Positions 7,816 through 62,223 of a stretch of 64,000 bases of DNA are shown one piece after another. How positions within the stretch are numbered: the stretch's first letter is position 1; the number at the start of each line of letters is the position of its first letter. Source of the DNA: Mobula hypostoma (Eukaryota). The DNA lies in NCBI RefSeq assembly GCF_963921235.1, contig NC_086121.1, positions 10,850,001 through 10,914,000 on the forward strand. Reading direction: 5' to 3'. The position numbers and the translations under genes were made by a program. The notes under the pieces are model-generated. The model made no database searches. It worked only from the letters and a program-made list of their open reading frames with translations, and had not been told where the DNA came from.

Positions 7816-8179
7816 CTTCACACGATCTTCTGTGGTTAAATGCAGAATCGATTTATTTTTATTTTTCACTGCAACTTTCTACAATAAACCAATTTTTGTT
7901 TCCGGAATTTGCATTAGCAGGGCTACTGGAAAAAGTGATGGGGAAATCCACCCCGCTACATAGAGATCAAAGAAATATAATTCCCCTTGAAATGAGTGGT
8001 TACTAGTAGAATGATACGATACAAACGAAAAAAGAAATGCTGTCCCAATTTCTTACACCTCAGATAAATGTCCTGCTTCGCATGCTGTGGGAAGGGAGAC
8101 AAAGGTTCTGCTTCGTGTGGATTTTCTATATAATCAGCCTTGACTGCGTGGGGAGTCAATCACTCAGTGATAGGTTGTG

Positions 8180-14890: not shown

Positions 14891-15254
14891 GAGGTATTTC
14901 AGAAGGATTGCTTGACTGAGAACCATTTAGTAAATCCCCAGAGTTGTGTAATTGTGTTTTGCAGATACTAAAGGATGTGTTCTGTTCCAATGAAGAATGA
15001 GAACTGGAAACTACTGCCTGTCGCCCTAAATGTCTCACTGTTAACAGCATTGCTCATCACTGGATGGATGATCATTGTTGATAGTGATCATGCAGTGGTT
15101 TTCTCAGGTCTGCAGTTTATGCCATTTCAACATCGTTTTCTAGACTTGCACATTGATTTATATATTCAGTACACATGATGTGTTATTGATTGGTCATACA
15201 AGACCAATACTAGACTGGTCTAGTATTAGCTGCTAGACTGGGACTACTGCAGGT

Positions 15255-18361: not shown

Positions 18362-18989
18362 GTCTAGAGATACCTATTATTGTATCCGGAGAATAGAAAA
18401 AAATGTGCATCAAAATAGGCAAATGAGTTTTAAAGAAAGCCTGTATTTCAATTACACTGAAGGTAATTAAGCAAATTAGCGAAATAAGATGCATGATGGA
18501 ATGAGGCTCTTGTATTGTGGACATGACCCAGGATGAATTTCTAATCCTCTAGATTCCTGCATTTGGAGAAATATCAGAAAATTTTACACATCATAATTGC
18601 AAAGCATGCAGTTGAATGTATGGAAAAGTTTATAAACCTTGATGGTAGAATGGTGTTGTGAATGTGGTATGAAAGAATTAGAATTGTTTCTGGAGCTAAA
18701 GTTAAATTAGGCAGTTTTGCTTTGTTAAGAGTTGTTAGACCTATATTGTGTGGATCTTGATGTTGAAATATGTCATTACTTTGTAAGTAAAAGGTACTAA
18801 CAACAAATGTTATTTGGATTAACTGCTGGTGCAAGCTGTACCCAAGCATCAAGATTGTGTAAGAATTCAGCTTTGCCAAGAAACAGAAAATACACATAAA
18901 GTCAAGTCTACTTGTTAAATATCAGAACGACACAATTCACTGGACTGGCAAGCACTTCCTATTTTTGTTTTTTGTTCACCTTTCTGCAG

Positions 18990-19074
18990 GAAATCTCAGG
19001 GGTCATATCGGGAGCAGGAGGTGGCACGGATTGGAATCCATTGATAGGTCGATGGCGCTCAGTAAAAGAAATGG
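18990..19074 (+). CDS. Candidate start-codon exon of the TNFRSF gene (5'UTR + ATG G)
   Basis: Long polypyrimidine acceptor (tttttgttttttgttcacctttctgcag|) and donor |GTAAGC at 19075. It ends GAA ATG G, a good Kozak context, in phase 1, matching the next micro-exon. Confidence 0.55.
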
Positions 19075-22000
19075 GTAAGCAGTGAAGTGGATCTAGAACT
19101 AGTGCTACTCTAATTGGGTGATACTATTAGACTGAAATGGCCCGTCTGTTATTTTGATCCTGAGAGCCTTTGTAGTTCTAAACCAGAGCAAGCATCCTCC
19201 TTGTATCTACTCTTGAGCCTCCCAAGCACTTTGTACTTTACAGAGGTCATCCCTCATTTCCCTGAGCTGGAGAGAATAGATGCCCTCCTAACTCTAGCAA
19301 GTACAGTTATCCCTGTTTGATTCACTGAAATGCCACAGATTATTTAGAACATCTCTCCTTAATTAACAAACTTTTCTTGCTATAACAAAATGGAGACTAA
19401 TCACCATGAATAATACATTTTGTTGTTCCATAAGACTATTAACATAGGAGCAGAATGAGGCTATTTGGCCCATTGTTTCTGCTCTGCCACTTTATCGGCT
19501 GATCTATTATCTCTACTGGCTTCTCCCCATCTTTGACGCTCTTACTAATCATGAACCTATCAACCTCCACTTTAAATCTACCCTATGATTTGGCCTCCAC
19601 TGCTGTCTGTGGAAAAGAACTCCACAGATTCACCACCCTCTGGCTAAAGAAATTCCTTCTCATCCTTGTTCTGAAGGGACATTCTTCTGTGCCGTGTGGT
19701 CCTAGATTTCCCCATTATAAGTAACATCCTCTCCACGTCCACTCTATTTCGGCCTTTCAGTATTCGATAGATTACAATGAGATCCCCCTTTATTCTTCTA
19801 AGCTAGAGCCCAGAGCCATTAAATGCTCCTCGTATATTCTCCCTTTCATTCCTGGGATCATTCTCGTGAACCTCCTCTGGACCCTCTCCTTTTCTTAGGA
19901 AAAGGGCCCAGAATGCTCACAGTACTCCCAAGTGCAGTGTGACCATTCTTGCCTTTTTGTCTCTTGTCAATATCATTCCTGCCATGATGCTCCACTTGTT
20001 CTTAACAATGTATTGTGTGTATTCTTGGTTTCAAATTACCCCCAGCAGCTCTAATGATTGCACTTCCTCTCAGGAAAAATGGCAAGCTACAGTATAAGCG
20101 GTAACACAACACTGGGTGCAGTATAAAAGTGAAGAACATGTGTTGATTGTCTGACGATGACCAAGACCTGTGCGGGAGGAGTCTTGTTGGACTGGACCAG
20201 TTCCACTCTCTCACCCTTACAAATCTTGATCCATTGGTATGAAAAACTGTCATGACTGGAGACTTCCTTGGCTGTAGTGGATAGCCATGTTACCTTCTGT
20301 GTCTTGTCATGCCTTTCGCTCTCCATGAAGCATGCAGCATTGCCTTCTTGGCCGTTAGATCTTGTAGTTGATCTCATCTGCACAGTCTGCTGGAACTGGC
20401 TTCTCATGCTGGGGCAGGCAAATCCCTGTCTCACTGGGGTTGGATGTTCCCGGCTACCCTCACCTGGTTTAACTCTCCTTTTGAAGCGGTGTGGCTGCTG
20501 TCGATTGCAAACAGTTACTTGGAGCCACAGGTGAGAGCTGGGTGACAGGTGGGGACCAAAGGTGGATGAGCTGCCCCTGAGTGGACGACAAGCCTGCCAC
20601 CAGAGGTGCTGCCCCTCCCTGGACACCCCGTACACCATACAGAGAATTAGCTTCGAGACATTGGAGCATACAGTGAAGTGTGTTGACAGCAGCAAATGAA
20701 ATCAGCGAGGATTGTGTTAGGTTGACTGCAAGTGCCACCACGCTTCCAGCACCAATATAGTATGTCTACAACTCACCAGCTCTAACCATACATCTTTGGA
20801 ATATGGGAGGAAACCAAAGCACTCGAAGGAAACCCAATCACAGGGCGTGCGTGCAACTCCTTACAGGCAGAAATGGGAATCGTATCCCAATCTTACAGTT
20901 GGTGTTGTAAAGTGTTGTGCAAACCACTACTCAACCATGCCTGTACATTATATATATTTATAGGGCAGCAATGAAGGTTCTCCATCTCTGGCAGTGTTCA
21001 GGGCTTCCTTCATCATGTTAGTAGCTTCCTCTTGAATCTTCGAGGAGACATTGTCAAATTGGTAAACAAAGCTGTGTTTAATGAGGCAGATCAGGATGAC
21101 AAGGAAATATCAAAATCTCGTGCCAAAGAGTTTACAATAAGGATTAAGTGGCCACGCATCAATAGCTATATTTAATGTCAGAGAAATGCATACAGTATAC
21201 ATCCTGAAATTGTTTTTCTTCACAAACATCCACAAAAACAGAGGAGTGCCCCAAAGAATGAATGACAGTTAAATGTTAGAACCCTAATGCCCTCTCCAAC
21301 TCACCCCTCCCCACCCACGGACAAGCAGCAGCAAGGCAACGACCCCCTCCCACCAGCAAAAAAGCGTCGGCGCCCCCACCAAGCACTCAGCGTGCAGCAA
21401 AGCGTTAATAGAGACAGACTTCCAGTACCCCAAAGACTACTCGTTCACCCAGTATTCGACATAGCACAGTGTGTGTGTCTCCCCCTCCCTAAGAAGGGAA
21501 AAAGAGGTGTCCCCGTTTCACCTGTTGAGGGGAGACACAATAAAACAACTGGCGGATTTATGGTGTTAAAAGTCTTTACATCGCTTTTTCTGTGCTCTAT
21601 GTCTCTGGGTACACAGCCAACAGCAAGCCTGCTGCTTCTGATCTTCCTTGTTCTCCCGCGACACATCAGTCGTTGGCGGTGGCATCAGCCTTGAATCAGT
21701 CCGCCTCCAAAGCCATGAAAATCCAGCACCCTGAAGACACACTAGCCTTCCAGGCTGCATACTTGGCATATCGAAAAGTGGCTAAACATGAGGTCCTGAG
21801 AGCTGGACAGGAGGCCCGCAAAGAACTGAATTCAGCGTGTAACTCCAGGTCAGGGTCTTCAAAAGAACGTTGAAAGGGGGAAAAAAAGATATCAAAGATA
21901 GAAATAAAGCTGTTTCCGAAGATTCAAGCAAAGGAGTCGCCGTTTAGCGCCATCATCACTCAGTTCCGCCACCGTAGCAGCATTGCAACTAAAACATCAC

Positions 22001-25000
22001 TGTGAGAAGTCGTTTTACAGAGGCAATCTTCAACAGTGAGAAAGTGATAGCCATCTTCAAAGATGAGAGTCCTAATTTGGAGAGGGGGTCTACATTGGCC
22101 ATACAATACCAAATGCTGTACATCATTGCAAGGACATTTTTGGATAAAGTAGAAAAGAGCCATCAAGTGTTCTGACATCATCATCATTAAGCTTCTTTCA
22201 TCAGTCACCCCGAAATAATCACAGGAAGAACCCTCCCCATTAGTATGGCCAACTCCATAAACCTCAGTGTTACTATCACCATAACTAGAACACCAGTAAC
22301 AGTTCTGTCTCCTATCTGCCCTGCTGTTACCTTTGCATGTAATGTGCCACTACTACTTGTGTACTTACATTAATTAGGAGCAGGAGTAGATCCTTCAGCT
22401 CCTTAAAGTTATGCCATCATCAGTTAGGTGATCATAAGCAGATTCAATTTATTACTTCAAATCTGCTTACTCCCAATAATCATTCATCCTTTTGCTTATC
22501 AAGAACCTGCCTTAAAGAAGAAGCTGTTTCCATTGGTATTTCAGGTATCAAAAGACTCTGAACCCTCCTAAAGAAAGCAATTTGCCTCCTCTTGTCTTGA
22601 GTAAGTGTTCTGAGGCACTCTGTGGCCACTTTATTAGGTACACCTGTACACCTGTTCATTAATGCAAATATTTAAACAGCCAATCGAGTGGCAGCAACTC
22701 ACTGCATAAAGGTATGCAGATATAGTTAAGAGGTTCATTTGTTGTTTAGACCAAGCATCAGAATAGGGAGATACTGTGATCTAAGTGACTTAGACTGTGG
22801 AATGATAGTTATGCTAGACAGGGTGGTTTGAGTACCTTAAAAACTGCAAATTTCCTGGGATTTTCCTGCGCATCAGTCTTTACAGAGAATGGTGCGAGAA
22901 ACAAAGGACATCCAGTGAGTGGCAGTTCTGTGGGTGAAAATGCCTTGTTAATGAGAGAGGCCAGAGAAGAATGGCCAGACTGGGTCAAGCTGACAGGAAG
23001 GTAACTAACTGAAATAACCACACACTTTACAATAGTTGTGTGCAGAGGAGCATCTCTGAACTCACAGCAGGTTGAACTTTGAAGTGGATGGGCTACAGCC
23101 GCAGAAGACCACTAATGTACGCTCACTTGCCACTTTATTAGGTAATGGAAGTACCTAATAAAGTGGACACTGAGTATATTTTTAATAATTAAATTTTAAA
23201 TTTGCTATTCAGAGATGTTTAATATATTTTTAAGTGCTCAAAGATATATATTGACTATAATTCTCGTCCTCTGAAATGCAACTTGTGTTTTTTTGTCTGG
23301 TTGGAAAAGTCTGCTTGCTTTATGCATTTTCCTTCTATAAATTACACCATCTGGTGTCGAGGTCCTCATCGACGTTGACGATGGACGAACATACATACTT
23401 CTATAAATAAAGATAAAAACCTGTGTATCCTTTCTTGGGTAAGGAGAGCAAAAGTCTAGTCTCATCAAGGCCCTGTAGAATTATAATAAGATATATTTGC
23501 TTGACTGATGCATTATCAAGTTATTTGTCTCTCCTTAAATGCAACTGAATGATCTCTATTTTCGCTTGAATTATCAGTCTGGTGAGCTGGTGAATTTAAA
23601 TTCCATGAAGAAAAGAATCTGGAATTGTTAAAAATCCCATTGTTAGCAATGCTAATGTTACCATGAAGTTACGACATGGGGAGAAACAATAATTCTTCCC
23701 TTTTCATGATGCTGATGTTCATAGGAAATGGAGTGGGAGGCAAGGATCGTAACATTTTAGCAGGCAAAGGAACAAGTTGAAAAAAAGAAATTGTAGTTTC
23801 AAAAAGAATACTGAATAAATAAAAGGGTCTAAGTTCTCGGGATAAGGGGAAAAGAACAGGGTAGTGAAATTGACTTATTTTTTCTTTAGAAAGAAAAATT
23901 GCTGAACATTCTTGGGAGGTGCAGTTATTGGAGCATCAGTGATAATGACCTTTGACTCTGTTTTTCATTTTCCACAGGGATAAACACATGGTCCAAATTC
24001 CAGCTGGAGTGGAAAAGCTCAATGTAGTAGCCCCAAATCTACAGGCTTTGCTCTTAATTGTTTCTATCGTTACCTATATCACATACCAAGAAAACAGTGA
24101 AAAATATTGCTTGTTATTTTCAGGTATGGGATTTCTTCCATATATTTCAGAAGGCCATTTGTTCGATTGGTATAATGATTTCAGTATGTGTTTGGTAAAA
24201 TAAATCTATTTGTTAATGATGCTTCATGTCCTTTTGCTTCCACTTTGCTGGTATTCAAGTAGATTAAGTCCAAATATTGTGTTTCAGCTTATAAGCTTTG
24301 TCCAATTTATTCAGATCCCAGAATTTGGTTTTGAGTCCCATTCTAATTACTTTTCCTCTCAATTGTAGCAATGTCAAAATTAATTCACAATGAGAATCAA
24401 TACTGGCCACAAAGGAACTGCATTATGGTCACCACAGTGACATTACAGGCAGTGTAAATGTCTCACATCTCCAGGGTCCCTTGTTCCATTCTGACCACAA
24501 AGGAAATGCTGTCTGTGGGAACTTTGCATGTTCTCTCTGTGATCTCCCTTCCCCCTCATTGCTCCTGTTTCCTCCCAAACCATCATGAATATTACTCCTG
24601 GTGTAAAAGGTTGGTGGAAGAAGCAGGGTGATGAAGAGAGGTTTATTTAGATGTAAGAGTATAAGTTGTCAGGAAATTAATAAATCTGTGGTGCAAAGGG
24701 TCTTGTGGGTCCTTGTGCACGATTCTCCTAAGGGATAATTAGCAGGTTGAGTTCATGCTGAAGAAAGCAAATGCAATGTTGGCATTCATTTCAGGACTAG
24801 TATATAAACTCAAGGATGTAACATTGAGGCTTTATAAAGCACTGGTGAGGCCTCACTTGGAGAATTATGAGCAGTTTTGGGGCCCTTTATCGAAGAAAGG
24901 ATGTGCTGACATTGGAGAGGGTTCAAAGGAGGTTCACAAAAATGATTCTGAATTGAAAGGCTTGTCATATGAAGAGTGTTTAGTGGCTCTGGGCCTGCAC

Positions 25001-37000: not shown

Positions 37001-40000
37001 ATTTCTGAACAGACAATGAACTGACCTATGAACAGTACCTTACTATTTTTGCTCACTTTTTGCGCTATGTAATTTACTTTTTAAAATGTATTTTTAGTGT
37101 AAATTGTAGTTTTCTATGTATTGCACTGTACTGCTGATGGAAATCAACAAATTTCAGGACATGCAGTACTGGGCAAAAGCCTTGGGTAGATAGTTATAGC
37201 TAGATGCTTAAGACCTTTGCACAGTACTGAGTAATTTTGTGTATTGCACTGTACAGTTGCTGCTGAAAAAAAACAAATTTCATGACACGTGAGAAACCTG
37301 GTTCCAAAAGTGGGAAGAGGGCAGGGAGAGGGTAATCATAGTTGCGAAAGGAGGAATGGAGAGGGGACAGAGTGGAAAGCACCAGAGAAACATTCTGTAA
37401 TGATTAATAAACCAATTGATTAGAACCAAGTAACCTTACCTGGTGTCTCAGGGCTGAGTATGTCTGCACACATACCGCCACCTGCCCTTGGCACTCCTTC
37501 TCTGCTACGTGTCCCGCACTTCTCTCATGACACTCCCCCCTCGCCATTCCCAACCTTCTTTGCTCCCACCAGATTTATGATCTTGCACTCCGCTTCATGG
37601 TGACAGATACAGCACTGAGCAAAAGTCTTAGCCACCCTGACTATATGTGTGCTTAAGCTTTTTGGACAGTATTGAATGTCATGATATTAAACCTGATTCT
37701 AATTCTGATAAACTTTAATCAGTGAACATGCAAATCAAATCACTTAACAGTTTTTCTCTTCAAAGCTTTCAATGAGGAAACATCATCTGCCACAATGAAA
37801 CTGGACAAACTGGTCAAGCTTTTTCCTGTGTTTCAGCAGTCATAATTTTTTTTTAGTGGCTGGTGTTGGCAGCAGGAGGTGATTTAGAATAACATTTTTT
37901 AAAAAGTCAGGTCACTTTGTTACAGAAAGTCTGTCAAATGCTAGAAGTTAACAAATTTCACAATATATGCCCATGGTATTAAACCTAGTTCTGATTCTGA
38001 AATGCCCTTCATCTGCCAGCTTGTGTACTTTATTAATATGGTTTCTTCCCACTTTCTTTCCAGCCTTGACGGCGAAGGGTCTCGGTCAGAAACATCAACT
38101 ATTTATTCCCCTCTATAGTTGCTCAGTTCCTCCAGCATTTTATGTGTGTTGCTCAAGATTTCCAGCATCTGCAGAATCTCGTGTTTATGCTAGAAATAAT
38201 AAGCTGGACAGGGCACATGAGGTAAACACTGAAACAGTAAAATTAGAGTAGTGAGGCAGCATTGTTGGTGAGTCAGCATCTCTCCACAGATGTCACCTGA
38301 CCAGCTGAGTATTCCCAGCCTTTTCAGTGAAATTTCAAGTATTCTGTACTTTGCTTGTCAACCAGAAACATTTACTCTATTTCTTTCCCAAAAACACAGC
38401 CTGGCTAGCTGAGAATTTTTATCATTTTCTGTCTTTAATTCAAATAAAAATGACTCGCAAAACTCTAGAGCAGCTGTGCACTTACAATTTTATGCTTTGG
38501 ATTACACCGTAGTTTGCAATATAATCTCTATAATTGCCTCAGACCCTGTTGAAAACCTGACAATAACGGTGCTGATTAATCTATAGGAAAGAGAACTGTT
38601 CCTTTGTTAATAGTCATGAAACAATACGGGTTTATAATTACACACTGTCGAGTGAAGTGAAAGATCTTTATTAAATCTGCAGTGATACTTCTGTTTAATT
38701 TTTTTTTTTGAGTTGTATTAATTCCTAAATTTAATGTTTAATTACAGATTATTTTGCTTCTATTACTGATTTCCCAAGTTCCAGTGACAACTGCTTGTGA
38801 CCCAGGGGAGTACGAAAATGATGGTGTCTGTTGTTTATTGTGTTCTCCAGGTAAGTGATGGCCAGTATTTTATGCAATAACTAGACAATGGGGTGACCCG
38901 TTGGGGCACCCTTTGAGAGAAGGGTAGTGCAGTCTGATGTGACCAGAATGAACATTAAATTTTCCTGAATGCTATTAGTATCACTTTGCTTTGGAAAGTG
39001 TAGTAGAAAACCTCAGTTTATTAAAGAAGAACGACGCGTAGCAAAGCAAATATAGCTGGTCCTCCTTTAACGAAGGACACTTTTGATGGCATCATTTCTG
39101 GTTTATCAGCCACCCTTGTGCCTCTCGTTGTCATTCTGGAGACGTGCAGCCCTTTCATCCCCCGTCTCTTCAGCTCTTCAACTCTTCATCTCTTCTGTTT
39201 GTTGTTTGTCTCTGATCCTGGAGACGTGCATGCCTCTCCTCCTCTGTCTCTTCTTCTCTCATCTTCTTTTGTCCTGATTCTTTGATCCTGGAGTCGTGCG
39301 GCCCTGGCCTCATCCAATTCTTGTTCTCTCCCTCTCCTTGCCGCTTCCGAGGACGTTTGGCATCATCTCTTGACTATAATGACCCCCTTCCCTTTCCACA
39401 TGGCATAATTGGCTGACCATTTTTTTAACCCAGATACTGGATAGAAGATACGAAGTAGTAACACCAAAGGATGCTGATTATTGATGATGTGGTTGAGGCT
39501 CTCCTAAATGGATGTGATATAGTCACCGCTGTCCTTTGCAGCAAAGGCTTTTATGTGTGTCTCGAAGTATGTCATTACAATAAGATTTAATTATCTTTTA
39601 TTGAAGGCTAGCAGTTAGATCTGTTCCAATCCTGCACATGCTGATGGTGATTAGCAGATGTGACCCCTGGAAATAGAGCTGCCCTGCCCTTTTGCTCCAG
39701 TAGGTGTCGCTGCTGAGGCTGGCCGCGCGCATGCGTCGGGCCGTCGCGTCCCGATTTCCATGATGGCCAATCGGGTCTCAAGTGAAAGCCGGCCTGTTGA
39801 TTTTTGGCGAATAAGCAATTTTATACGAATATATAACCCTGAACTTTGCCTGCATTCTGTAAGTTAGCGCATTTTAATTCGATTTAACCAAAAGAAGTGC
39901 CACTGTAATGCAGTGTTTGTGCTAATTGGAGGTCACAAACAGACAGACAGAACATGAGAGCTTTAGTATTATATAGATTATCTCAATGCCAACAGAGTGC

Positions 40001-43000
40001 GTTTCATTAGCTTTCAAAAGTGGTGCACGTATATTTTTACTAAAAAAATATATACGCCAGGAATGGATTTCAGTAAGGTTTTGACAAGTTCCTTCAAGGG
40101 AGATTCATCCAGAAGATAACAATTGCATGGATCCATGGTGAATAGGCTGTTTGGATTCAGAATTGGCCTGCCCATAGGAGACAGGGTAGGGGTCAATGGG
40201 ACTCATTCTAGCTGGAGGTTTCTGATTTGTGGTGCTGTGCAGGGATCTGTACTTGGAACTCTGCTGTTTGTGATACATATTAATGACCTATATGAAAACG
40301 TAAATGGGTGGTTGTTAAGTTTGCAACTGATACAAAGACTAGTGCTCTTGTAGATAGCGTAGATGTCTGGCAAAGGGTACAGCAATATATAAACAGGCTG
40401 CAGATATGGGCAGAGAAATGATCCAATGTGAAATGACACACAAAGTTGCTGGTGAACGCAGCAGGCCAGGCAGCATCTCTAGGAAGAGGTACAGTCGACG
40501 TTTCAGGCCGAGACCCTTCGTCAGGACGAAGGGTCTCGGCCTGAAACGTCGACTGTAGAGTCCTGACGAAGGGTCTCAGCCTGAAACGTCGACTGTACCT
40601 CTTCCTAGAGATGCTGCCTGGCCTGCTGCGTTCACCAGCAACTTTGTGTGTTGCTTGAATTTCCAGCACCTGCAGAATTCCTGTTGTGTCCAATGTGAAA
40701 TGATGCACTTTTGGAAATATAAAGTGACAATCCACTGTTAATGGAAAGACCATTGCTGTTGGTGAGTAGAGGGATTTTGGGGCATAAATTCGTAGATCCC
40801 TAAAAGTGATTACAAGTTGATAGTGTGGTAAAGAAATCATATGGCATGTTTGCCTTGCATGTTGAGGAACTGAGCTGAAGAGTTGGGAAGTTTTGTTGCA
40901 GCTCTATAAAATTCTATTTAGGCCCCATCTAGAATGTTGCATTGTTCTGGTTACCCTATTATGGGAAGGAGGGGGTGCAGAGAGGTTTACCGGGATGCTG
41001 TCTGGCTTAGAGTGCATCTGCTAGCTATAGGAATAGGTTGGACAAACTTGGGTTGTTTCCTGTGGAGCAGCAGAGACTGAGGGAAGATTTGAGATAGGTT
41101 TATAGGATTAGCAAGAGGCAATGATAGACAGCCGGTATCTTTCTCCCAGCGTTGAAATGTCTTTTACCAGAAGGTATGCATTTAAGTGAGAGGGAGTTAC
41201 TTCAAAGGAGATGTGTGAGAAAAGCATTTTTATTCCGAAGAGTGGTGGTGCCTGGAATGTGCTGCATCCTGGGGTGGTGGTAGAGGTAAATACAATAGGG
41301 ACGTTCACAAGGTTCTTGGATAGGGACATGGATGTGCAGGAAATGGAAGAATATGGATATTATGTAGATAGAAGAAATTACTAATTTAATTATTTCACAA
41401 CATTGTGGGCTTTAGGACCTGTTCCTCTGCTGTACTACGTTCTACGTTCATAGAGCATAGTTCAACTATATAAACTATGTTCTAATGAATTTTATTTTAT
41501 CAGTGACATTTCCCTTTTCATATGAAAACGTATGTACATTTTCTTTTCTGTTGTTTGTATTGTGGTTTTCTTTTGTTTAATATTTCTGTAAGGCAATTAA
41601 GTTTCTCATTCATATATGTAGCCTTTTCCTAGAGGATTTTAATGGTTAGACAGGTTGAAACTTCCTAGTCCGGCATCCTGGAAACCTGAGAAATGGCCCT
41701 AGAGCTCCCAATGTAAATATATGCCTGATCCCTGGGCTTGTTAGTTCACACTGACATCCGTGAGGATCCAGTACAGAAAATCATACAATGCTGATCTGAG
41801 GAAATAGATATCAACACACATAAGATGCTGGAGGAACTCAGCAGATCAGGCAGCATCCAGGACTGAAGAAGTATCTCGGCCCAACACATCGACTGTTCGT
41901 TCATTTCCATGGATGTTACCTGATCTGCTGAGTTTCTCCAGCATTTTGCGTGTATTTTGGATTTCCACCATCTGCAGAATTTCTCATGTTGAGGAAATAG
42001 ATGAAGTTTTACATCACTTCTGAGAGTCGGTAGACTGGTGAATATTCAAGGACTCTGTGGCCAATCTAAAAGAGTATGTCACCACAGTCAGACTTCATCA
42101 GCAAGTGTCTAGAGGACTGCACAGTACAGAGGTCAGTTTGGGTGTTTGCCAGCCAGAAACCATGATAAACCGAGAGATCGACTCCCTAAGAATTGCAGGT
42201 CTGCTCTATTCTAATGAGCTGACCCTGACCTGTACATGAAACTGAGCTACGGCCTTTGTAAAGCTATCAGGAGTGCCAAGAGACGGATCGAGTCCCAGAC
42301 CAGCCATCAGGGCTTGCGTGCTATAACAGGTTGGGCATTATCACTGATGAGCTCAATGCATGTTTTGAACAGAAGGGTATTGAAATGACAACAGCCTCCG
42401 AAACACCTGAACCCACAGTCACTGTTGCAGATGTCAGATCGGCTTTCCTCCGAGTGAGCCCACAGAACATATCTGGCCTGCATCCTTTCATCCTTTATGG
42501 ACCTACAAACAGGGTTTTATGCGTACATTTCTAACCACTTCCTACTCCAATCTGAGGTTTCTACATACTTTAAGAAGACCACTATCATCTCAATGCCACA
42601 GGAAAAGAAAATAGCATGCCTTAGAAACTACCATCCAGTGGCTCTTGACATCCACCATCATAAGTCCTACTAGCTTGTGCCATGAACATGCACGTGGTGC
42701 AATAACCGTTGATACAAGAGTTCCTACAGATGCTGGGAATCAAGAGTAACACACTCAATGCTGGATGCACTCAGCAGGCCAGGCAGCATCAATAGAGAAG
42801 AATAAACAGTTGATGTTTCAAGTCAAGATATTCTGTTTGGGTCTCAGACCGTGCTTGTCAAAGAATAGCAATAGCTACAGGCAGCAGCAGCACAGCAAAA
42901 AGCAAAAATTGGGAAAGAGAACAGCTTGAGTGAGAGAGAGCTAAAAAGGGCACCGGAAGTTTAAAAAAAAGCTTTTTTTAACATACATCACTAATTAACA

Positions 43001-46000: not shown

Positions 46001-49000
46001 TACTGAAGTAAAGTATTTATTAAGTACCTCTGCTATTTCTTCCGGTCCCATACACACTTTCCCACTGTCACACTCGATAGGTCCTATTCTTTCATGTCTT
46101 ATCCTCTTGCTCTTCACATACTTGTAGAATGCCTTGGGGTTTTCCTTAATCCTGCCCGCAAAGGCCTTCTTATGGCCCCTTCTGCCTCTCCTAAATTCCT
46201 TCTTAAGCTCCTTTCTGTTAGCCTTATAATCTTCTAGATCTATGACATTACCTAGCTCTCTGAACCTTTTGTAAGCTTTTCTTCTTGAGTAGATTTATTA
46301 CAGCCTTTGTACATCACGGTTCCTGTACCGTATCGTAACTTCCTTGTCTCATTGGAACGTACCTGTGCAGAACTCCACGCAAATATCCCCTGAACATTTG
46401 CCACATTTCTTCTGTACTTTTCCCTGAGAACATCTGTTCCCAATTTAAGCTTCCAATTTCCTGCCTGATAGCCTCAAAAATTCCTCTGACTCCAATTAAA
46501 CGCTTTTCTAACTTGTCTGTTCCTATCTCTCTCCAATACTATTGTAAAGGAGATAGAATTATGATCATTATCTCCAAAATGCTCTCCCACTGAGAGAGCT
46601 GACACCTGACCAGGTTCATTTCCCAATACCAAATCAAGTACAGTCTCTCCTCTTGTAGGCTTATCTACAAATTGTGTCAAGAAAAATTCCTGAACACACC
46701 TAACAAACTCCACCCCATCTAAACCCCTTGTTCTAGGGAGGTGCCAGTCGATATTTGGGAACTTAAAATGTCCCATCATGAAAACTCTGTTATTATTATA
46801 CCTTTCCAGGATCTGTTTCCCTATCTGCTACTATTTATCCCTGTTATTATTGGGGGGCCTATAAAAAACACCAAGTAAAGTTATTGAACCCTTCCTGTGC
46901 CTAACTTCCACCCACAGAGACTCCGTAGACAATCCCTCCATGACGTCCACCTTTTCTGCAGCCATGACACTATCACTGATCAACAGTTCCACACCTCCTC
47001 CTCTTTTGCCTCCCTCCCTGTCCTTTCTGAAACATCTAAAACCCAGCACTTGAAGTAACCGCTCCTGTTCCTGAGCCATCCAAGTCTCTGTAATGGCCAC
47101 CACATCATAGCTCCAAGTACTGATCCACGCTCTAAGCTCATCTGCTTTGTTCACAATACTCCTTGTGTTAAAATAGACACATCTCAAACCGTCGGTCTGA
47201 GTGCGTCCATTCTCTATCACCTGCCAAGCCTCCCTCACACACTGTCTCCAAGCTTTCTCTATTTGTGAGCCAACTGCCTCTTCCCGAATCTCTTCAGTTC
47301 GGTTCCCACCCCACCAACAATTCTCGTTTAAACTCTCCCCAATAGCCTTAGCAAACCTCCCCGCTTGGATATTGGTCCCCCTGTGATTCAACTGCAACCT
47401 GTCCTTTTTGTACAGGTCACACCTGCCTGAAAAGAGCTCCCAATGATCCAGAAATCTGAATCCCTGCCCCCTGCTATAATCCCTCAGCCACGCATTTATC
47501 CTCCACCTCATTCTATCCCTATACTCACTGTCGCGTGGCACAGGCAGTAATCCCGAGATTACTACTTTTGCAGTCCTGCTTCTCAATTTCCTTCTTAACT
47601 CTTGTTTTTTTTTGACGGCTGTCCCAAATAAATGGCTGCCATGGTTATCTGATGACCCAATTAACCAGAATCCACTTATCAGTAATGATATTCACCATCT
47701 CCTCCAGTGTACCAGGGTAATCTGAGGAAGGGACTGTTTGAAAACCAAGACCACACACATCTGTCACAAAGCTCATGCTCCACAGTGCAGCAGTGATTCA
47801 CTACACCCCTGTGTGTTTCTGTGGCATGGACGATATGCAGCAAGAAAACCTTAGCATGAGACAAGTCTCTGCAATCCCTCCAAATCTGCTGGCCGGATAA
47901 GCAAACCAGCATCAACTTCCTTTCCTAGGCCTGATGGATGTCCATATCATTTGCAGGGCCTGAAACAAATTGTTCTGAGCTAAGTGACAGTAAGCAATTA
48001 CCAGGTGGACAGACAAAAAAGTTCAAAGAAAATTTATTATCAAAGTATATCACCATATACAACCTTGAGATTTATTTTCTTGCAGGCATTCACAGTACAA
48101 AGAAACACAATAGAATCAATGAAAAACTACACACAGAGAGACAACCAATGTGCAAAAGACAACGAATAGTGCAAATATGACAAAAAATAAAAAATCTAAA
48201 TAATAAATAATGAGAGTGTGATTTATAGAGTCTTTGAAAGGGAAGCCATAAGTTGTGAAACCAATTTAGTATTGGAGTGAGTGTAGTTATCTACTCTGGT
48301 TCAGGGGTCTGATGGTTAAAGGCTAAAAGAGGCTTGTTATAAAATTGTGAAGACTTACCGATTAATGGGCATCCCAAGTTTGTGTCTGCTCAAAATGGGG
48401 AAGGAATATTGAAGTGTGCATACAGAGCCTCAGGTTCCTGCATTAAGAACACACTGTCATTGGCAGATTGAGCACATCACCCCTCAAGCTATGTACCCAC
48501 CTGCCCAATTACAGACATCCTTCCAGAATTATGGCTGAGTCCCTGAGGTTCACATTAGCTTTATCGTCCACCTCTGAACCACAGAGCTGGAGCTTAACCA
48601 AGGCATCCACAATACCAAGGGGCTGCAAAAAATAGAGTGTATCCATGATGGTGCTTATGCATACAGTGTCTCGGAATACCTGACATTGCTGAAATACTAC
48701 TTCTGCTCAGAAGTAATAATGGTTCTCAAGTAGGGTTTTTTTTGGCAAAAAATGCATTCTAATTGATTCTTTGAGAGCAGAATAAGCATTGTGATTCCTT
48801 GTCTCTTTTCCAATGCAGATTTTTGTTTTATTGCAGGCAGTAGAGTATCCAAACACTGCACCGTGATGACGGGAACGACATGTAATCCCTGTACAACTGG
48901 AGAGTATATGGAGCATCCAAATCAGCTAAAGAAATGTTTTAAGTGTAAAATCTGTGATCCAGGTATATATTATAATATTGATTGGAGTTATGTGATTTTA

Positions 49001-52000: not shown

Positions 52001-55000
52001 TCCTTGCCTTTCATAATTGTATAAACTTAGATTTCCCATCAACCTCCACCACTCCAGAGTCAACATCTCAAACTTGTCGCACCTGTCCTTATAGCAGCTT
52101 CCCTCTAATCCATGCAGCACCGGGTAAACAACTTCTTCACCCTTTCCAAATTCCTCACATTCTTCCTATAATGGGACGACCTGTATGGAATGCAATTCTC
52201 CGGATGCAGTCTAACCATAGTATTATGGGTAACCTATGGTAGATGGAACATTAAGTTCTTAATCCACTTTGATTAATAATGAAAGAATGGTGTGTTTGCT
52301 GAGCTCTCGTGGGACTCTACCTGGATGTTGTGCACACTTCTGGTGTCTTGGCCTAAAGATGGACATATTTTTGATAGAGGAGGACAACAAGAATTCCTGA
52401 GATAAGAAATTGTCTTATAAGGAAATATTAACAGGGTCATATTATTGTAGACTCTACAACCCTACCTTTTTTATGCCATGGACCCCTACTATTAACTAAT
52501 TCATCATGGACACCTGTTTGGGAAACCCTTTTCTGGAGTTTAGAAGAAGCATGAGAGATGATGACATTCTTAGTTAAAAATTCTTCGTGGGATTAACAGG
52601 AATAACATTTTCCCTTGCTGGGATTATCTGGAACATGGAGCCACAGTCTCAGAGTGAGAGCACAGCTACTTTGCGAGGCTCACCAGCTGTGCGTGTTTAA
52701 GACCAAGTGTGATATATGTTCAGATTTTGAGGGATATGAGCTTATTACAAGAGAGAGGTGCTGAGCTACAAGATCTTTTTGGATGGTGGCACAGACACAA
52801 GGGGTTTAGCAGCCAAATCCTGATGTAGTCTTCTGTCTAACTTCAAACAGAAAGTAGTATATTTTAATTCATCGTGGACCTCATAAATGTTTTTGTATTT
52901 ACAGAGCCTGGACTACAAACTAAAGAAAACTGTACTGCCTTTCACAATACGATATGTGAGCCCAGGGAAGGGTATTATTGCATTGCTGATTGTCAGATGG
53001 TCAGAAAGCACACAGCATGCCCACCTGGTGAAGGAGTTAAAGAGAAAGGTAGGTCGATGGAGTGTCGTTACTAAGTGCTGTGCCCTGGGCAGGACAGGGG
53101 AAATTGAAATCTCTGGCACCATCTGGAGTTTGTTCTGAGGATGGCTGCCTGAGGCCCCCTACTGGCAATGGCAGCTTGCTGTTAGTTCTTTGAGTGTAAC
53201 TGAAATGGCTTTGGATTTGTATTTTAAGAAGCTAATTCATCCCACTTCCCATTTTTACCCTCTTTTGGGCAGTCTTGATTTTCAGTCACTATTGTCCATT
53301 TTATTGCTGGACTGCCTGCACTCCTGACCACAGAAGGTCGGAGGAATTTAAGGTGTGGGGTTATATAGGAGGCAGGGTTTAAGGGTCAGCACAACATTGT
53401 GGGCGGAAGGGCCTGTACTGTGCTGTACTATTCTATGTTCTATGTTCCCCTTGATCTGCGCCAATTCTATGTTGAATAGCTCAGAATAAGACAATAAGAC
53501 ATAAGAGCAGAATTAGGCCATTTGGTCCATCAAGTCTAAAAAGCACTGACACGGCAAGAATTGTGTTTGTACTTGTAATTAATGTACTAAGACCATAAGG
53601 CAATAAGACATAGGAGCAGAATTAGGCCATTTGGACCATCGGGTCTGCTGCACCATTCCTTCATGGTTGATTTATTCTCCCTTTCAACCCTGTCCCCTTG
53701 TAACCTTTGATGCCCATACTGATCAAAAACTTCTCAAACCCCTCTTTAAATATACCCAATAACTTGGCCTCTACAGCCATCTGTGGCAAGAAATTACACA
53801 GATTCACTACCCTCTGGTTAAAGAAGTTCTTCCTCATCTCTGATATCATTATTACTTTGTTATTGCCTTATCTGCTCTCTTCTGTCACTGTTATTCCAAA
53901 GTCTGAGCAAATTCTTCAGCTGATACAGAGGCCCACACACTATTCCTCCATTAGGAAAGGAAAACACGATAGCCTGTTCCATTCCTGTGCTGCTCGGAGC
54001 TGGGAGTGTTATTTGTACAGGGGTGTGACCAAGAAACATGGGTATATTTCTAGACCCTAGTAACTGACTGAAGGTCTTTGTGGATGTTAAAACAGGTTCA
54101 AAAAGTATTTCTCCTAAACACAGAACTACTCAGTGAGGTGGATTCTTTGATATTTTCAACATACTACAGGTGACAACTTCATCACTGTTGAAAGTGGAAG
54201 TGCAGAAAGTGAACATTTATTTGATTCATTGTTAAATATTGCTCATATGTGAAGAAAATTAGCTATTTGAAGAGGAGTGTGGAAAGTAACAAGGTCTCTC
54301 TGACAGTGGTATTACAGACTCTATAAGTTACCCACAATGACATTGATTCTGTGTTTCAGGAACACCTTTCAAAGATACAGTGTGTGAGAAATGTCCTCAC
54401 GGAACATTTTCAAGCAAAGTTTCAACAACTGAAGAGTGTAAGAGCTGGACAGTGTAAGTACTTTAAACTCCATGGTATCCATGTTCAGAAAGTACCACCT
54501 CTTGTTGGTTTTTTGCAATACTTATTTTCTTATTGTCCTAACCCATCAGGGAAGAGGCCACACAGTGACCATGCCAGGATCACTAGACTCAAAACCAGTT
54601 ACTTCCCCCAAGCTGTCAGGCTGATCAACACCTCCCCACATTAACCCAACACACCACTCCCCACACCACTACATACACATCACCCAGCAGCACTTTATGT
54701 GCATATAATCAGTCTGTGAATATAACAGTTACTTGTACATTGTGTTTTACAGGATTACTTTTATATTTATTGTGGGTTTTTTGTTTTTTCTTTATTGTAT
54801 TCTTTAAGAACATAAGACATAGGAGCAGAATTAGACCATTGAACCCATCGAGTATGCTTTCCCGTTCCATCATGGATGATTTATTATCCTCCCTTTCCAC
54901 AACCCCATTCTCCTGCCTTCTCCCCAGAACCTACTACATGACCATAAGATTTAGGAGTAGAATTTATGTGTATTCTGTTTTGTTTTATGTTCCATCGAAT

Positions 55001-58000: not shown

Positions 58001-61000
58001 GACTGTATCACATTACCTAAACTTTACAACATTTCAACACATTTCACAGGCAAAGGAACTCAACTGCCCCTTAATGTCTACATTACTTTATCACATCAGG
58101 TTTTCTGTGTTACCTGGGAATTTTTTAGTTTTTGATTGTCATTCAGAAGTCAACACTTGCACAGTGGATGCACCTTCTGTCAGTCAGAAGGTCGTGGGTT
58201 CAAGTCCAATTTCCAAGATTTGTGCCCCGAATCTAAGCTGACGTTCCAGCACAGTGTCTCGGGAGAGATGTTAAACCAAGACCTTGTCTGCCCGCTCTGA
58301 TGGAAGTGAAGGATCTTGCAGGTCTTTGACAGTTGACCTCTTCCTGATCAACTGGGGTTGCAATGGGATTTCAATAACAGATGAAGTGTAACAGATTTAT
58401 TATAATTAAACTTAGAGCAACTATCGCGGGTGCTTGTATAGATTTATATTTTCTCTGTGTCTTCCCCAGATGTGAAACCCTCAAACTTAAACAGGTTGAA
58501 GCAGGGAACGCTGAAGCTGACGTGAAGTGTGAAGAAGAGTCCAACCTGAAAGTTGTGGTTGCTGTTGTTGTGGCGATTGCTGTGGTTGTAATTCTGTCTG
58601 GTATCGCGGCAGGTGTTTTGTTGAAGAGACACCAATGTACACCAGGTATGTGATTGAGTTACTCTGTGCATAGAACATAGAATATTACAACACAGTACAG
58701 GCCCTTTGGCCCATGATGTTATGTCGACCTTTTAACTTTCTCTAAAATCAATCCAGCCCTTTCCTCCTACTTGGCTCTCATTTTTTCAGATTCAGATTTA
58801 TTTATTTACCACATGTACGTTGAAACTTACTGTGAAATGCATCATTTGCTTTAACAATGGCAGCCTGCAAGTGTCACCACACATTCCGAAGCCAGTACAA
58901 CTTGCCCACAGTGTTCACCACAACAACAACGTAACATAATGCAGAACAGCACAAGCAGCAACAACAACAGAACAAAACAAGACAACAACAGCCAAACAAG
59001 CCACCGTCCCAACCTCCCACCCCATAACACACAGAGGCTCCAACCCCCGGACAAGCCACATCCTGGCCTCCAGGTCTTGGCTCCAGACCCTCAAACTCAC
59101 AGATATTGGACTTCCAAACTCCAATCTCTGGCTCCGACTCCCAGACTTCCAGGCATCAGGCACCAGGTCTCCAACCTCTAATCTCTGGCCAGGACTCACT
59201 GTCTACCTCCCAACTTGTTGAGCTCTGGACATCAATCTTCAGCTTCGGCCTCTGGACCATCGATCTCTGGGTGTCAGCCGCAAGACTTGCCAATCACCCA
59301 CTTGACCTTCGGACCCAAACAAAACCATTTTCCAGGATCGTTAACTTTCAGCCGCAGAGCGTTTTGGGCCTCGGCTTCTAGCTTCACATGGATCTCCGGG
59401 GTGGTGGGCAGAGGTGTGTGGTGTAGCCAGCCCCCATGACTCCCCACCCATGCTGACCTCTGGCTTGGAATTTAGTGACCTGGGGATCGCTGGTCTCCTC
59501 GGCACCTGTTGAACTGATCTGACCCAATCTCCATATCACTGGCCTTTGACCACGCAGCGATCCAACCTAAACGTGGAAAACCAACTCGTGCCGCTGACCC
59601 TTCATTCTCCCGCACACCTGTCCCTAAATCCTAACTGAACCTCTGAAGCTCCACGCTATCCCCAAGCTATACATACAAACCTAAAAAGAAACTACAATGT
59701 GAACCGTGACATCGCTAGACATCGCACCTCACGGCAACTTGACACAAAAGCTAGCTCCTACCCCTGACACTTCATTTACTGTGCCTGATGTCCAACCCTG
59801 TCCCTGTCCTTGAACCCTAACCTGATCCCCAACTCCCCACACTATCCCGAGCTCCACTGCTACAGACCTATATATTGACACACATCACAGCCCAGCACCA
59901 TCCTGAACGTAAGATGTCAGCTCATCCTCTGCTGAAATCCTCAGTCACCTCTTTGCTACTTTTACACCGCTGCCCTACTTGCTGATTAACATTAGCTCCT
60001 GCTATAAGTTCACTTCAACTTTTAAATTTTAACACTTTCTTTCAAGTCCTTCCTTGGCCTTGCTCAAACCCTATTCCTTCCCATCAACCTTATGCAATCT
60101 TGCAATCTCAAAATTCCTGATCTCCCAATCATCCCTGAATTTACCATCCACCAGTCCTCTAATGTGTGGAATTTCTTCCTGGAATCTATCTATCTTTGAT
60201 GTTCTCCAACAGATTTACCTCTGTGATCCTGCTGATACATCTGACTTATTGTTACAAATATCAGTGTGTCAATTTTTCATTGATTCTATTGTATTTCTTT
60301 GTTCCACTAAATGCCTGCAAGAAAATGAATGGTGACATAGATGTACTATGATAATAAATTTACTTTGAACTTATTGTCTAATATGCCAGTATTTTTGTCA
60401 ATAATCCAATTAAATTCTTCAGAATACCATTCCCAGTAAATTCCTGCTCTAATTCATTAGCCTTTAATTCTGATGCATGTGGAGAAAGTGGCTCCAAGCT
60501 TAAAAGGAGTGGGATAAGATGGAAATGTTGTGCACAAGCCCCACACCAGGTAGAACATGGAGAGAGTCCATGAAGATGAACATCCACCAATCTTAACAGC
60601 TCTGGCCATTTAGGCTGGTTGGACTCTGCAGCTGTGGTTATGCCAACAGACTTCCGACATTTCAGACTTTGTGGAAACCTCTCGACCATTTTGTATATCA
60701 CAGTATTAACATGATCAGAACGTAGCTGTCCATTTTAAAATGGGTCCCATCGGGCGGCGGTGGAATCTTTCATCAAACTGAAATGAGACAAAGGTAACCG
60801 TTGTGACGGCAACACTCCAGCTTCAGGCTGGTGATGTCACTTTGGTAAAACAACCTCCCACACACCATTCTTGTAGATCGATGCTAGAATGTAATTTGCT
60901 TTTTAAACTCCCATTAATTTCAAGTAAAAATATGGTAGAGCAAAGTAGAAATATGGTAAATTAATTTCACAGTACTTTTTGTATAAACCTATTTGTGTTT

Positions 61001-61039: not shown

Positions 61040-62223
61040 GTAAGTACATAATATCTCTCCAATATACGTGTAATAAATTGTGATTCCTGCAGAATTAATA
61101 TTGACAACATAATGCAGGCAGACTGCAATTTAATATTATGTTTTCCCTGCACATTATTTTTATTTTGGAATGATGCGTAATTTCACCAGTTGCAAACCAT
61201 GTTGAAGGGTAATATCAGCTGATAGTATCTGAAGTGTTTAGTGTTTACATACCGAGGTTACTAATAAGGCCATAGACATGGGGCTGAATTAGACTATTCA
61301 GCCCATTGAGTCTGTTTCACTCTTCACCATGGTTGATTTACTTTCCATCTTGTTGGAAAATTGTGAGCAGTTTTGGTCCCCATATCTCAGAAAATATCCA
61401 GGATTGTGAGGATAGGTTGATAACTCTATACCTGTTTATACTGGAGTTTAAGAAAATGAGGGGAGATCTCATTGAAACCTGCTAAATACTGAAAGACCTA
61501 GACAGAGTGGATGTGGACACGATGTTTCCTATAATGGGGGAGTCTAAAACCAGAGGGCAAAGCCTCAGAATAGTTGGGCGTCCCTTTAGCAGAGTTGATG
61601 AGAAATTTCTTTTGCCAGAGGACGGTGAATCTGTAGAGACAAGTCATTGGGTATATTTAAAATGAAGGTTGATAGTTTCTTGATTAGTAAGGGCGTCAAA
61701 TGTTATAGAGAGAAGGCAGGAGAATGGGGTTGAGAGGGAAAATAAATCAGCCATGATCAAAAGCTTGATGGACATAGGAAATTCTGTTCCTGTGTTTCAT
61801 GGTCTTATAGAAACTAGTTGAGATGATGTGATGTGCCTGCTGTGGTGGGGAGGAGTAATAACCTGGTGTAATGTTGGGGGGGCCAGTGCTGCACAGTGTG
61901 GTTGGCAGGACCAGGGCTGATGAGGAAGAGTATGGATGATAAGACAGGATGCTTTCTGGTAAGATATCATTGGTGATATTGATTGATAGATATTTCTGTT
62001 TTGGGCTGGTGAAGTCCCAGATATACATGCTGAGAATGTGGAATGTGAGACAACACCGGGTGTCTAATGGGAAGATGGAGAGTGACATGGAAGGTGATTT
62101 GAGATGATCATGGAAGTTGTTTCGACTGTCAGTTGCTTCAGGAGTTCTCTACTCATGGAGCAATAATAGATATCACAGTAATCGAGGCTGATTTAACGAT
62201 GATGTCCATGAAGCAATATTTCT

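What the first reader, a model, noticed from the sequence alone, without database searches (positions are those of the whole stretch)
40546..40594. Tandem duplication converts a dimer-dependent Penelope hammerhead into a single-molecule type III ribozyme on the host pre-mRNA strand
Established: Penelope-like elements carry minimal type I hammerheads whose helix III is only a short palindrome, so they are thought to act as dimers. Seen: two copies lie 40 nt apart. The + strand reads ACGUC^GACU-guag-AGUC-CUGACGA-AGG gucucag CCU-GAA-ACGU. GACU (40551-54) pairs with AGUC (40559-62) and closes stem I with a GUAG tetraloop. AGG/CCU forms stem II, and ACGU (40546-49) pairs with ACGU (40586-89) as stem III. 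All conserved core bases are present, with predicted cleavage after C40550. Inference: this is a circularly permuted hammerhead created by an insertion artefact, in sense orientation inside an intron of an immune receptor gene. Stems are short (4/3/4 bp), so activity is not assured.
Basis: partly seen in the sequence, partly recalled or inferred. Interest (0 to 1): 0.85.

Follow-up and report, generated by a model that had tools for sequence, protein, structure and literature searches.

The report
Hammerhead drawing inside Penelope palindrome insertion
The ribozyme motif can be drawn as described, but it is a by-product of an ordinary Penelope-type retrotransposon insertion, and a 92-base-pair hairpin formed by the same insertion should keep it from ever folding, so it is very probably inert.

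Summary
A type III hammerhead drawing fits 40546-40589 with a complete core. It is the only such match in the window, with none in shuffles.

The context changes the meaning. The motif sits in a 252-bp insertion (40437-40688) with 15-bp target duplications, which is absent from a related species. The insertion has the published Penelope-like layout: an inverted 5'-truncated copy, a partial tandem copy, a full copy and a 37-bp tail at one end.

The inverted copy is complementary to both halves of the proposed ribozyme. Folding gives a 92-bp hairpin (about -204 kcal/mol). The hammerhead fold costs about 25 kcal/mol more (p about 3e-18). It is disfavoured even in the isolated 49-mer (p about 3e-7). 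At every transcription length either the substrate half or the enzyme half is paired to the left arm.

The concept is not new. Tandem minimal hammerheads folding together on one RNA is the published double-hammerhead model, and such Penelope ribozymes cleave poorly even as dimers.

The intron and sense-strand claim holds: the site lies in a roughly 10-kb intron of a TNF-receptor-family gene.

Other first-reader notes in this scan describe similar Penelope palindromes and a tandem mini-dimer elsewhere in this genome.

Verdict: a real motif, an ordinary origin, and activity improbable.

The parts
40422..40436 (.). Left copy of the 15-bp target-site duplication (TCCAATGTGAAATGA).
   Evidence: direct repeat family D2. 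In one search, X9 record 26 joins 40421 directly to 40689.
40437..40527 (-). Inverted, 5'-truncated copy (S1). On the - strand it carries a complete minimal type I hammerhead (CUGACGA...GAAACGUC at 40524-40497). It has no tail. It is complementary to both S2 and S3.
   Evidence: (I1, I2).
40525..40557 (+). Partial + strand copy (S2). It runs from G5 of the core to 7 nt past the cleavage site and lacks C3 and U4. It supplies the proposed substrate strand and forms a perfect 33-bp palindrome with 40490-40522.
   Evidence: (D1, I2).
40558..40558 (+). A single G at the S2/S3 junction with no counterpart in native copies.
   Evidence: In one search, contigs 40529-40560 and 40531-40577 cross it at 100% identity.
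40559..40651 (+). Full + strand copy (S3), starting at the 5' strand of helix I (AGUC). It supplies the proposed enzyme strand. It differs from S1 only at 40578, where A replaces G at a CpG.
40652..40688 (+). A 37-bp tail present only at the right end of the insertion. This is the Penelope-like 'tail' signature.
   Evidence: the arms end at 40651; a native copy ends the same way; PMC8557442 and PMC11167929.
40689..40703 (.). Right copy of the 15-bp target-site duplication.
40546..40589 (+). Helix III is 40546-49/40586-89. C17 is 40550. Helix I is 40551-54/40559-62 with a GUAG loop. The core is 40563-69. Helix II is 40570-82. GAA is 40583-85.
   Evidence: The energetics speak against it.
38772..38852 (+). 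Upstream exon of the host TNF-receptor-family gene (start of the first cysteine-rich domain).
   Evidence: tblastn of P0001 residues 139-165, 93% identity.
48836..48964 (+). Downstream exon of the same gene (cysteine-rich domain), with a polypyrimidine-AG acceptor and a GT donor.

Best explanation
The motif is an accidental by-product of one young Penelope-like element (PLE) insertion and does not act as a ribozyme.

What is shown: a 252-bp non-coding unit was inserted in one event into an older LINE fragment in an intron of a TNF-receptor-family gene. The unit consists of an inverted 5'-truncated copy (S1), a 33-nt partial sense copy (S2), one filler G, a sense copy (S3) and a 37-bp tail. This is a miniature of the usual PLE insertion layout: inverted copy at the 5' end, partial tandem, tail at one end.

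Why the drawing appears: the family's minimal type I hammerhead has no helix III loop and has a palindromic ACGU. Placing S2 directly before S3 therefore yields one half of the classical double hammerhead, which can be written as a type III motif.

What is inferred for the RNA: in the host pre-mRNA, S1 pairs first with S2 in a perfect 33-bp hairpin, and then with S3 in a 92-bp hairpin. One half of the proposed ribozyme is therefore always sequestered.

What is inferred for the origin: the layout probably arose by reverse transcription primed from both nicked target strands, followed by snap-back or template switching within the hammerhead region.
For: Structure and insertion:
- Anatomy, inverted and direct repeats, and target duplication.
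- Empty site in related organism B: X9 record 26 is a 328-nt contig with 162 nt on one side and 166 nt on the other, joining 40421 to 40689.
- The element family is extremely abundant. Summed depth is 10^5 to 10^6 over the element, against 10-30 on the flanks.
- The published PLE architecture matches: high 5' truncation, partial tandems, an inverted 5'-truncated copy at the 5' end, and a 30-40 bp tail at one end (PMC8557442). The tail is explained by internal initiation, and the PLE protein cleaves and extends both DNA strands (PMC11167929).

Energetics:
- 49-mer: the hammerhead fold is -5.9 kcal/mol against a minimum free energy of -14.2, p about 3e-7. The 49-mer's z-score against shuffles is -0.56.
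- In context: the hairpin is -204 to -214 kcal/mol with z = -25.5. The hammerhead costs about 25 kcal/mol more, p about 3e-18.
- Transcription-length series: the substrate half is 100% paired to S1 up to 40589, and the enzyme half is 93.5% paired from 40600 on. No hammerhead pair exceeds 1e-3 probability.
- With S1 removed, p is still about 1e-7.

Other:
- No Rfam hammerhead hit at E up to 10.
- Literature: single PLE minimal hammerheads are inactive, and dimeric or trimeric constructs show low activity, mostly at non-physiological Mg (PMC4209133). [quoted passage not shown] For an Anolis PLE, no RNA-seq reads end at the hammerhead site (PMC11167929).
Against: - Nearest-neighbour energy models ignore the tertiary stabilisation of the hammerhead core and ignore helicases or RNA chaperones in vivo. 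Cleavage is irreversible, so a rare excursion into the active fold could still count.
- The Rfam models also miss the native type I copies of this family, so that negative result says little.
- No RNA end data could be obtained. All runs were available only as contigs.
- The proposed origin by priming on both strands is inferred from one locus and from the literature. It was not demonstrated.
Confidence: 0.8

Rival explanations
1. One reading: S2 and S3 fold in cis into a minimal type III hammerhead that cleaves the host pre-mRNA intron after C40550.
For: The core is complete and the three helices can be drawn. It is the only descriptor hit in the window, with 0 in shuffles. It lies on the sense strand inside an intron. 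Dimeric constructs of weak-helix-III hammerheads do cleave in cis in other animals (PMC7229834).
Against: The stems are only 4, 3-4 and 4 bp, and there is no G10.1-C11.1 pair and no recognisable loop-loop contact. The fold costs about 8 kcal/mol over the ground state in isolation and about 25 kcal/mol in context. One half is always paired to S1 during transcription. PLE minimal hammerheads are poorly active even as designed dimers.
Confidence: 0.05
2. The relevant RNA feature is the 92-bp near-perfect hairpin, not the hammerhead. As long intronic double-stranded RNA it may be edited or diced, or it may perturb processing of the intron. At the DNA level the palindrome may be unstable.
For: The minimum free energy is -214 kcal/mol with z = -25.5. 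Rfam microRNA-precursor models align to it as a generic long hairpin, at E about 1e-8 but below their gathering scores. The RNA-like runs X5 and X6 cover the unique flanks, so the locus may be transcribed.
Against: There is no direct evidence of editing or small RNAs. The A>G differences at 40491 and 40505 also occur in the DNA runs, so they are family variants. The insertion is young and may simply be neutral.
Confidence: 0.12
3. The tandem duplication or the palindrome is an assembly artefact.
For: PLE tandem and inverted structures are known to trouble assemblies (PMC8557442).
Against: Contigs built from reads of run X1 cover 40529-40560, 40531-40577 and 40548-40584 at 100% identity. Together they link the S2 G variant, the junction G and the S3 A variant. 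The last contig has single-haplotype depth of 8.4. Caveats: X1 may be the assembly's own sample, and none of these contigs has 31 nt on both sides of the junction.
Confidence: 0.03

Closest known systems
Double (dimeric) hammerhead of tandem type I ribozymes with a weak helix III (Forster et al. 1988, as cited in PMC4209133 and PMC6765202; axolotl and newt retrozymes, PMC7229834).
   Same: Two neighbouring copies on one RNA pair their palindromic helix III segments. The cleavage site of the upstream copy is served by the core of the downstream copy. Topologically this is a type III arrangement whose helix I is closed by the spacer between the copies.
   Different: Here the repeat period is only 40 nt, so helix I is closed by a 4-nt loop. 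The upstream copy lacks C3 and U4, so only one active site is possible. An inverted third copy competes for both halves.
Minimal hammerheads of Penelope-like elements (Cervera and de la Pena 2014, PMC4209133; Lunse et al. 2017, known to me only through citations).
   Same: Type I order, no helix III loop, a palindromic 15.x/16.x segment (ACGU), a short helix I, a place in the 3' region shared by dispersed truncated copies, and a possible extra nucleotide after A9.
   Different: The pair next to the core in helix II is A-U or G.U rather than G-C. Helix II is 3-4 bp, against the 6-8 bp described for several PLE families.
Canonical PLE insertion architecture (Craig et al. 2021, PMC8557442; PMC11167929).
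   Same: 5' truncation, a partial tandem, an inverted 5'-truncated copy at the 5' end, a 30-40 bp tail at one end only, and a target duplication.
   Different: It is miniature, at 252 bp with no coding sequence. All three internal breakpoints fall inside or at the edge of the hammerhead.
Intronic hammerheads of amniotes (Rfam Hammerhead_HH9 and HH10; cited in PMC7229834 as having a role in mRNA biogenesis).
   Same: A hammerhead motif on the sense strand within an intron of a host gene.
   Different: Those are conserved across species, have full-length stems and tertiary contacts, and match Rfam models. This one is a species-specific young insertion with no Rfam match.

Membership tests
Hammerhead ribozyme, type III topology | Conserved core: C3 U4 G5 A6 N7 G8 A9, G12 A13 A14, the A15.1-U16.1 pair, and H17 before the cleaved bond. 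| tested here: met
   CUGACGA at 40563-69, GAA at 40583-85, A40586 paired with U40549, and C40550.
Hammerhead ribozyme, type III topology | Three helices around the core, with helices I and II closed by loops and helix III open. | tested here: met
This holds on paper only.
Hammerhead ribozyme, type III topology | A G10.1-C11.1 pair closing helix II at the core. PMC4209133 describes it as highly conserved in canonical and PLE hammerheads. | tested here: not met
   A40570-U40582, or G40571.U40582 with A40570 bulged. All copies in the window read the same.
Hammerhead ribozyme, type III topology | The active secondary structure is the favoured fold of the RNA, or at least an accessible one. | tested here: not met
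   p is about 3e-7 in the 49-mer, 1.5e-4 in the 44-mer and 3e-18 in context.
Hammerhead ribozyme, type III topology | A match to the curated covariance models (Rfam Hammerhead_3, _1, _II, HH9, HH10). | tested here: not met
   No hit at gathering score in the whole window and none at E up to 10 in 40380-40720. This is weak evidence, because the native type I copies are missed too.
Hammerhead ribozyme, type III topology | Tertiary contacts between loop 1 and loop 2 that allow activity at physiological Mg. | tested here: inconclusive
   Loop 1 is the 4-nt junction GUAG, created by the insertion. Loop 2 is 4-7 nt. No known contact motif is recognisable by eye, and no tool tests this.
Hammerhead ribozyme, type III topology | Site-specific self-cleavage that leaves 2',3'-cyclic phosphate and 5'-OH ends. 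| not testable with these tools
   Only contigs were available for the runs, and contigs cannot show RNA ends.
Penelope-like element (minimal hammerhead and insertion signature) | A type I minimal hammerhead without a helix III loop and with palindromic 15.2-16.2 positions. | tested here: met
   The criteria are from PMC4209133.
Penelope-like element (minimal hammerhead and insertion signature) | Insertion layout: 5' truncation, a partial tandem, an inverted 5'-truncated copy, and a 30-40 bp tail at one end. | tested here: met
   for the anatomy. The 37-bp tail is 40652-40688. The criteria are from PMC8557442.
Penelope-like element (minimal hammerhead and insertion signature) | In longer copies the hammerhead region lies downstream of an ORF encoding a reverse transcriptase and a GIY-YIG endonuclease. 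| tested here: inconclusive
   The ORF at 63188-62598(-), just upstream of the 62303-62260 hammerhead, shows by eye a Cys cluster followed by GVIY...YIRET..R..EH. Pfam and PDB sequence searches gave no GIY-YIG hit. Its homologues are unnamed ray proteins.

The most novel reading that the evidence does not exclude
Two readings remain that the evidence does not exclude.

(a) A small fraction of nascent transcripts escapes the hairpin, for example through helicases or through opening of the double-stranded RNA. These would self-cleave in cis, which would make this an intronic ribozyme born in a single retrotransposition event.

(b) The duplicated unit is exactly one hammerhead. S2 ends 7 nt past the cleavage site, at the open end of helix I, and S3 begins at the other strand of helix I. 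This could mean that the PLE reverse transcriptase jumped across the base of a folded hammerhead in its template. The ribozyme fold would then shape the insertion architecture.
Probability: 0.06. Interest if true: 0.5.

Novelty: new member of a known kind. Interest (0 to 1): 0.15.

Why it matters
If the motif were active, it would show a dimer-dependent transposon ribozyme turned into a self-sufficient one by a single insertion, inside an immune-receptor pre-mRNA. On the evidence here it is not active. Its value is as a clear, dated example of the tandem and inverted insertion layout of Penelope-like elements: it has target duplications and an empty site in a related species. It also carries a caution. 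Any tandem pair of minimal hammerheads can be redrawn as a type III motif, so such drawings need a folding check in their real context.

Tried and rejected
- Rfam at gathering score over the whole window gave nothing.
- Rfam at E up to 10 on 341 nt gave only generic long-hairpin matches to microRNA-precursor families, all below their gathering scores, and no hammerhead family. I do not read these as microRNA genes.
- RNA evidence for cleavage could not be obtained. Every run was available only as contigs, which cannot show ends or strand. The element is so abundant that only the junction words are locus-specific, and no contig from the RNA-like runs X5 or X6 was seen to cross the S2/S3 junction. 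This proves nothing either way.
- A>G differences at 40491 and 40505 are not RNA editing. They occur in the DNA runs as well.
- Pfam and PDB sequence searches of the ORF upstream of a longer copy gave no GIY-YIG hit. The motif is seen by eye only.
- Lunse et al. 2017 (PMC5785218) is not held in the library. I cite it only through PMC6765202 and PMC10085705.
- A simple 40-nt tandem duplication of a finished foldback was considered and rejected. The two units differ at both boundaries, AG against CU at core positions 3-4 and GA against CC after GACUGUA. The copies are therefore separate template-switch products.

Full report
OBSERVATION

- Two + strand copies of a hammerhead-like segment lie 40 nt apart, at 40520-40557 and 40560-40597, 92% alike.
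- The core CUGACGA is at 40563-69 and GAA is at 40583-85. A40586 pairs with U40549, and C40550 stands before the proposed cleaved bond.
- GACU/AGUC forms helix I with a GUAG loop. ACGU/ACGU forms helix III.
- A descriptor I wrote for type III hammerheads (stems at least 4/3/4) finds exactly this one site in the window on both strands, and none in 30 dinucleotide shuffles.

So the motif is real as a pattern. It is not an independent coincidence. It follows directly from placing two copies of a real minimal type I hammerhead head to tail.

WHAT THE FINDING LEFT OUT

The motif lies in the middle of a 252-bp unit, 40437-40688, flanked by a perfect 15-bp direct repeat at 40422-36 and 40689-703. The unit has these parts:
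- S1 (40437-40527): an inverted copy that carries a complete hammerhead on the - strand.
- S2 (40525-40557): a partial sense copy that starts at G5 of the core. It reads AGGACGA where CUGACGA is needed, so it cannot be an enzyme.
- One G at 40558.
- S3 (40559-40651): the full sense copy.
- A 37-bp tail (40652-40688) found only at the right end.

S1 and S3 are 99% complementary over 92 nt. S1 and S2 form a perfect 33-nt palindrome. The only S1/S3 difference is G against A at 40578, at a CpG. Two longer copies of the family elsewhere in the window show the native sequence upstream of the hammerhead (TTTCAGTTAGTC before CUGACGA) and the same 3' end.

ONE YOUNG INSERTION

Contigs of a DNA run from a related organism (X9, record 26, 328 nt) join 40421 directly to 40689, with more than 160 nt on each side. 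That is the empty site carrying a single copy of the 15-mer. The whole palindromic unit therefore entered in one event after the two lineages split.

The family is enormously abundant. Summed contig depth is 10^5 to 10^6 over the element, against 10-30 on the flanks.

At 100% identity:
- Contigs spanning the palindrome tip (40506-40537 and 40512-40545) have depth of about 3500, against 10-17 for single-copy flanks.
- Contigs across the S2/S3 junction (40529-40560 and 40531-40577) have depth of 54-95.
- The contig that also includes the locus-specific A40578 (40548-40584) has depth of 8.4.

So the foldback tip recurs roughly a hundred-fold in the genome. The tandem junction occurs in a handful of copies. 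This locus is seen in read-derived contigs, which argues against an assembly artefact. The caveats are that X1 may be the assembly's own sample and that these contigs are short.

FIT TO PENELOPE-LIKE ELEMENTS

- Craig et al. 2021 (PMC8557442) describe PLE insertions as highly 5'-truncated and often in partial tandems. They often carry an inverted 5'-truncated copy at the 5' end, and a 30-40 bp tail at one end. The unit here is a miniature of that layout.
- PMC11167929 shows that a PLE protein cleaves and extends both DNA strands. It initiates reverse transcription internally, which explains the tail.
- From this I infer priming on both strands, then snap-back or template switching inside the hammerhead region. 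This is inference, not demonstration.
- The 'Penelope' label rests on the minimal hammerhead and on the insertion signature. A GIY-YIG-like motif is visible by eye in the ORF upstream of the 62.3-kb copy. Pfam and PDB sequence searches do not confirm it.

DOES THE RIBOZYME FOLD?

With ViennaRNA:
- In the isolated 49-mer the hammerhead structure scores -5.9 kcal/mol, against a minimum free energy of -14.2. Its share of the ensemble is about 3e-7. The 49-mer is no more structured than shuffles, with z = -0.56.
- In the 44-mer the share is 1.5e-4.
- With the left arm present, the RNA forms a 92-bp hairpin of -204 to -214 kcal/mol, z = -25.5. The hammerhead costs about 25 kcal/mol more, p about 3e-18.
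- I folded transcripts of growing length. Up to 40589 the substrate half is 100% paired to S1. From 40600 on, the enzyme half is 93.5% paired to S1. No hammerhead pair ever exceeds 1e-3 probability.
- With S1 removed, p is still about 1e-7, because of a competing local fold of S3.

These models ignore tertiary energy and cellular helicases, so they do not prove inactivity. The penalty is nevertheless far beyond what a minimal core could repay.

Three further points weigh against activity:
- The pair next to the core in helix II is A-U or G.U, not the conserved G-C (criterion).
- Loop 1 is an accidental 4-nt junction.
- No Rfam hammerhead model matches at E up to 10. The same models also miss the native copies, so this last point is weak.

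COMPARISON WITH WHAT IS KNOWN

- Cervera and de la Pena 2014 defined the minimal hammerhead on the reasoning that a second copy nearby, as in tandem repeats, lets two motifs fold into an active dimer. Their Fig. 1A shows this.
- In their assays single motifs were inactive. Dimeric and trimeric constructs were weakly active, mostly at non-physiological Mg.
- Axolotl dimeric constructs cleave efficiently in cis (PMC7229834).
- Tandem duplication as a route to circular permutation is discussed in PMC10085705.
- Retrozyme consensus lengths as short as 51 bp are on record.

In a double hammerhead of two type I copies, the cleavage site and the 3' strand of helix I come from the upstream copy. They pair with the 5' strand of helix I and the core of the downstream copy. 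The only new aspects here are the very short period and the truncated first copy.

HOST GENE

The exon at 48836-48964 (+) has a polypyrimidine-AG acceptor and a GT donor, and it matches Pfam TNFR_c6. A library search with it found P0001, a 368-aa protein that is 90% identical over the exon and has three TNFR_c6 stretches. tblastn of P0001 on the window places exons on the + strand at:
- 14975-15109
- 18965-19075
- 23979-24134
- 38772-38852
- 48836-48964
- 52904-53050
- 54359-54454
- 58471-58647

From memory, the cysteine pattern resembles TNFRSF14 (HVEM). I did not test this. The best matches of a transposon ORF are to stingray proteins, so the genome is probably that of a batoid ray.

VERDICT

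The pattern is real and its origin by an insertion event is well supported. The strand and intron context is right. The claim of a functional, novel single-molecule ribozyme is not supported. The most likely state of this RNA is a long, inert hairpin. Interest is low. What remains of interest is the mechanism that makes all three internal breakpoints fall at the hammerhead, and whether such palindromic mini-units are themselves copied.

Noticed in passing
window 62219-63771: A roughly 1.6-kb 'tails-out' palindromic fragment of the same family. Its arms run from about 62219-62819 and 63171-63771, 87-96% complementary, around a 351-nt centre. A hammerhead lies near each outer end: 62303-62260 (-) is intact, and 63690-63730 (+) is decayed, with GAAA changed to AAAA and CG to TG. 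The ORF at 63188-62598 (-) shows a GIY...YIG-like motif by eye, but there is no Pfam or PDB hit.
   Followed up: partly
window 40506-40545: Contigs that span the exact palindrome tip have depth of about 3500 in run X1, against 10-17 for single-copy flanks. The same foldback junction therefore recurs on the order of a hundred times in this genome. Either the junction forms repeatedly, or there is a copied palindromic subfamily.
   Followed up: partly
window 40421/40689: A related organism (run X9) has the empty site. In organism A the flanks show two haplotype-like contig sets, with 0 against 7-13 differences per roughly 150 nt. One set shares variants with the related organism. The insertion may be heterozygous or polymorphic.
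   Followed up: no
window 40120-40350 and 40700-40900: The unit is nested in an older LINE-like fragment, which gives a weak RVT_1 match on the + strand.
   Followed up: no
window 14975-58647: A TNF-receptor-family gene lies on the + strand, with at least eight exon matches to P0001. The first roughly 130 residues of P0001 lack any TNFR domain and may come from a doubtful gene model.
   Followed up: partly
window 10048-10116 (-): The relaxed type III descriptor (stems 7/2/3) gives one further hit here. This is at the chance level, with 0.27 expected per shuffle.
   Followed up: no
window 8001-9000: A GC-rich kilobase (55.5% GC against 42% for the window) with overlapping repeated ORF pieces at 8693-8950 and 8761-9018. 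It may be a CpG island or a tandem repeat upstream of the gene.
   Followed up: no
window 40000-41200: The small RNA-like runs X5 and X6 hold contigs over the unique intronic flanks at depth 3-30. This is compatible with transcription of the intron, but the runs' nature is only a guess and the strand is unknown.
   Followed up: no
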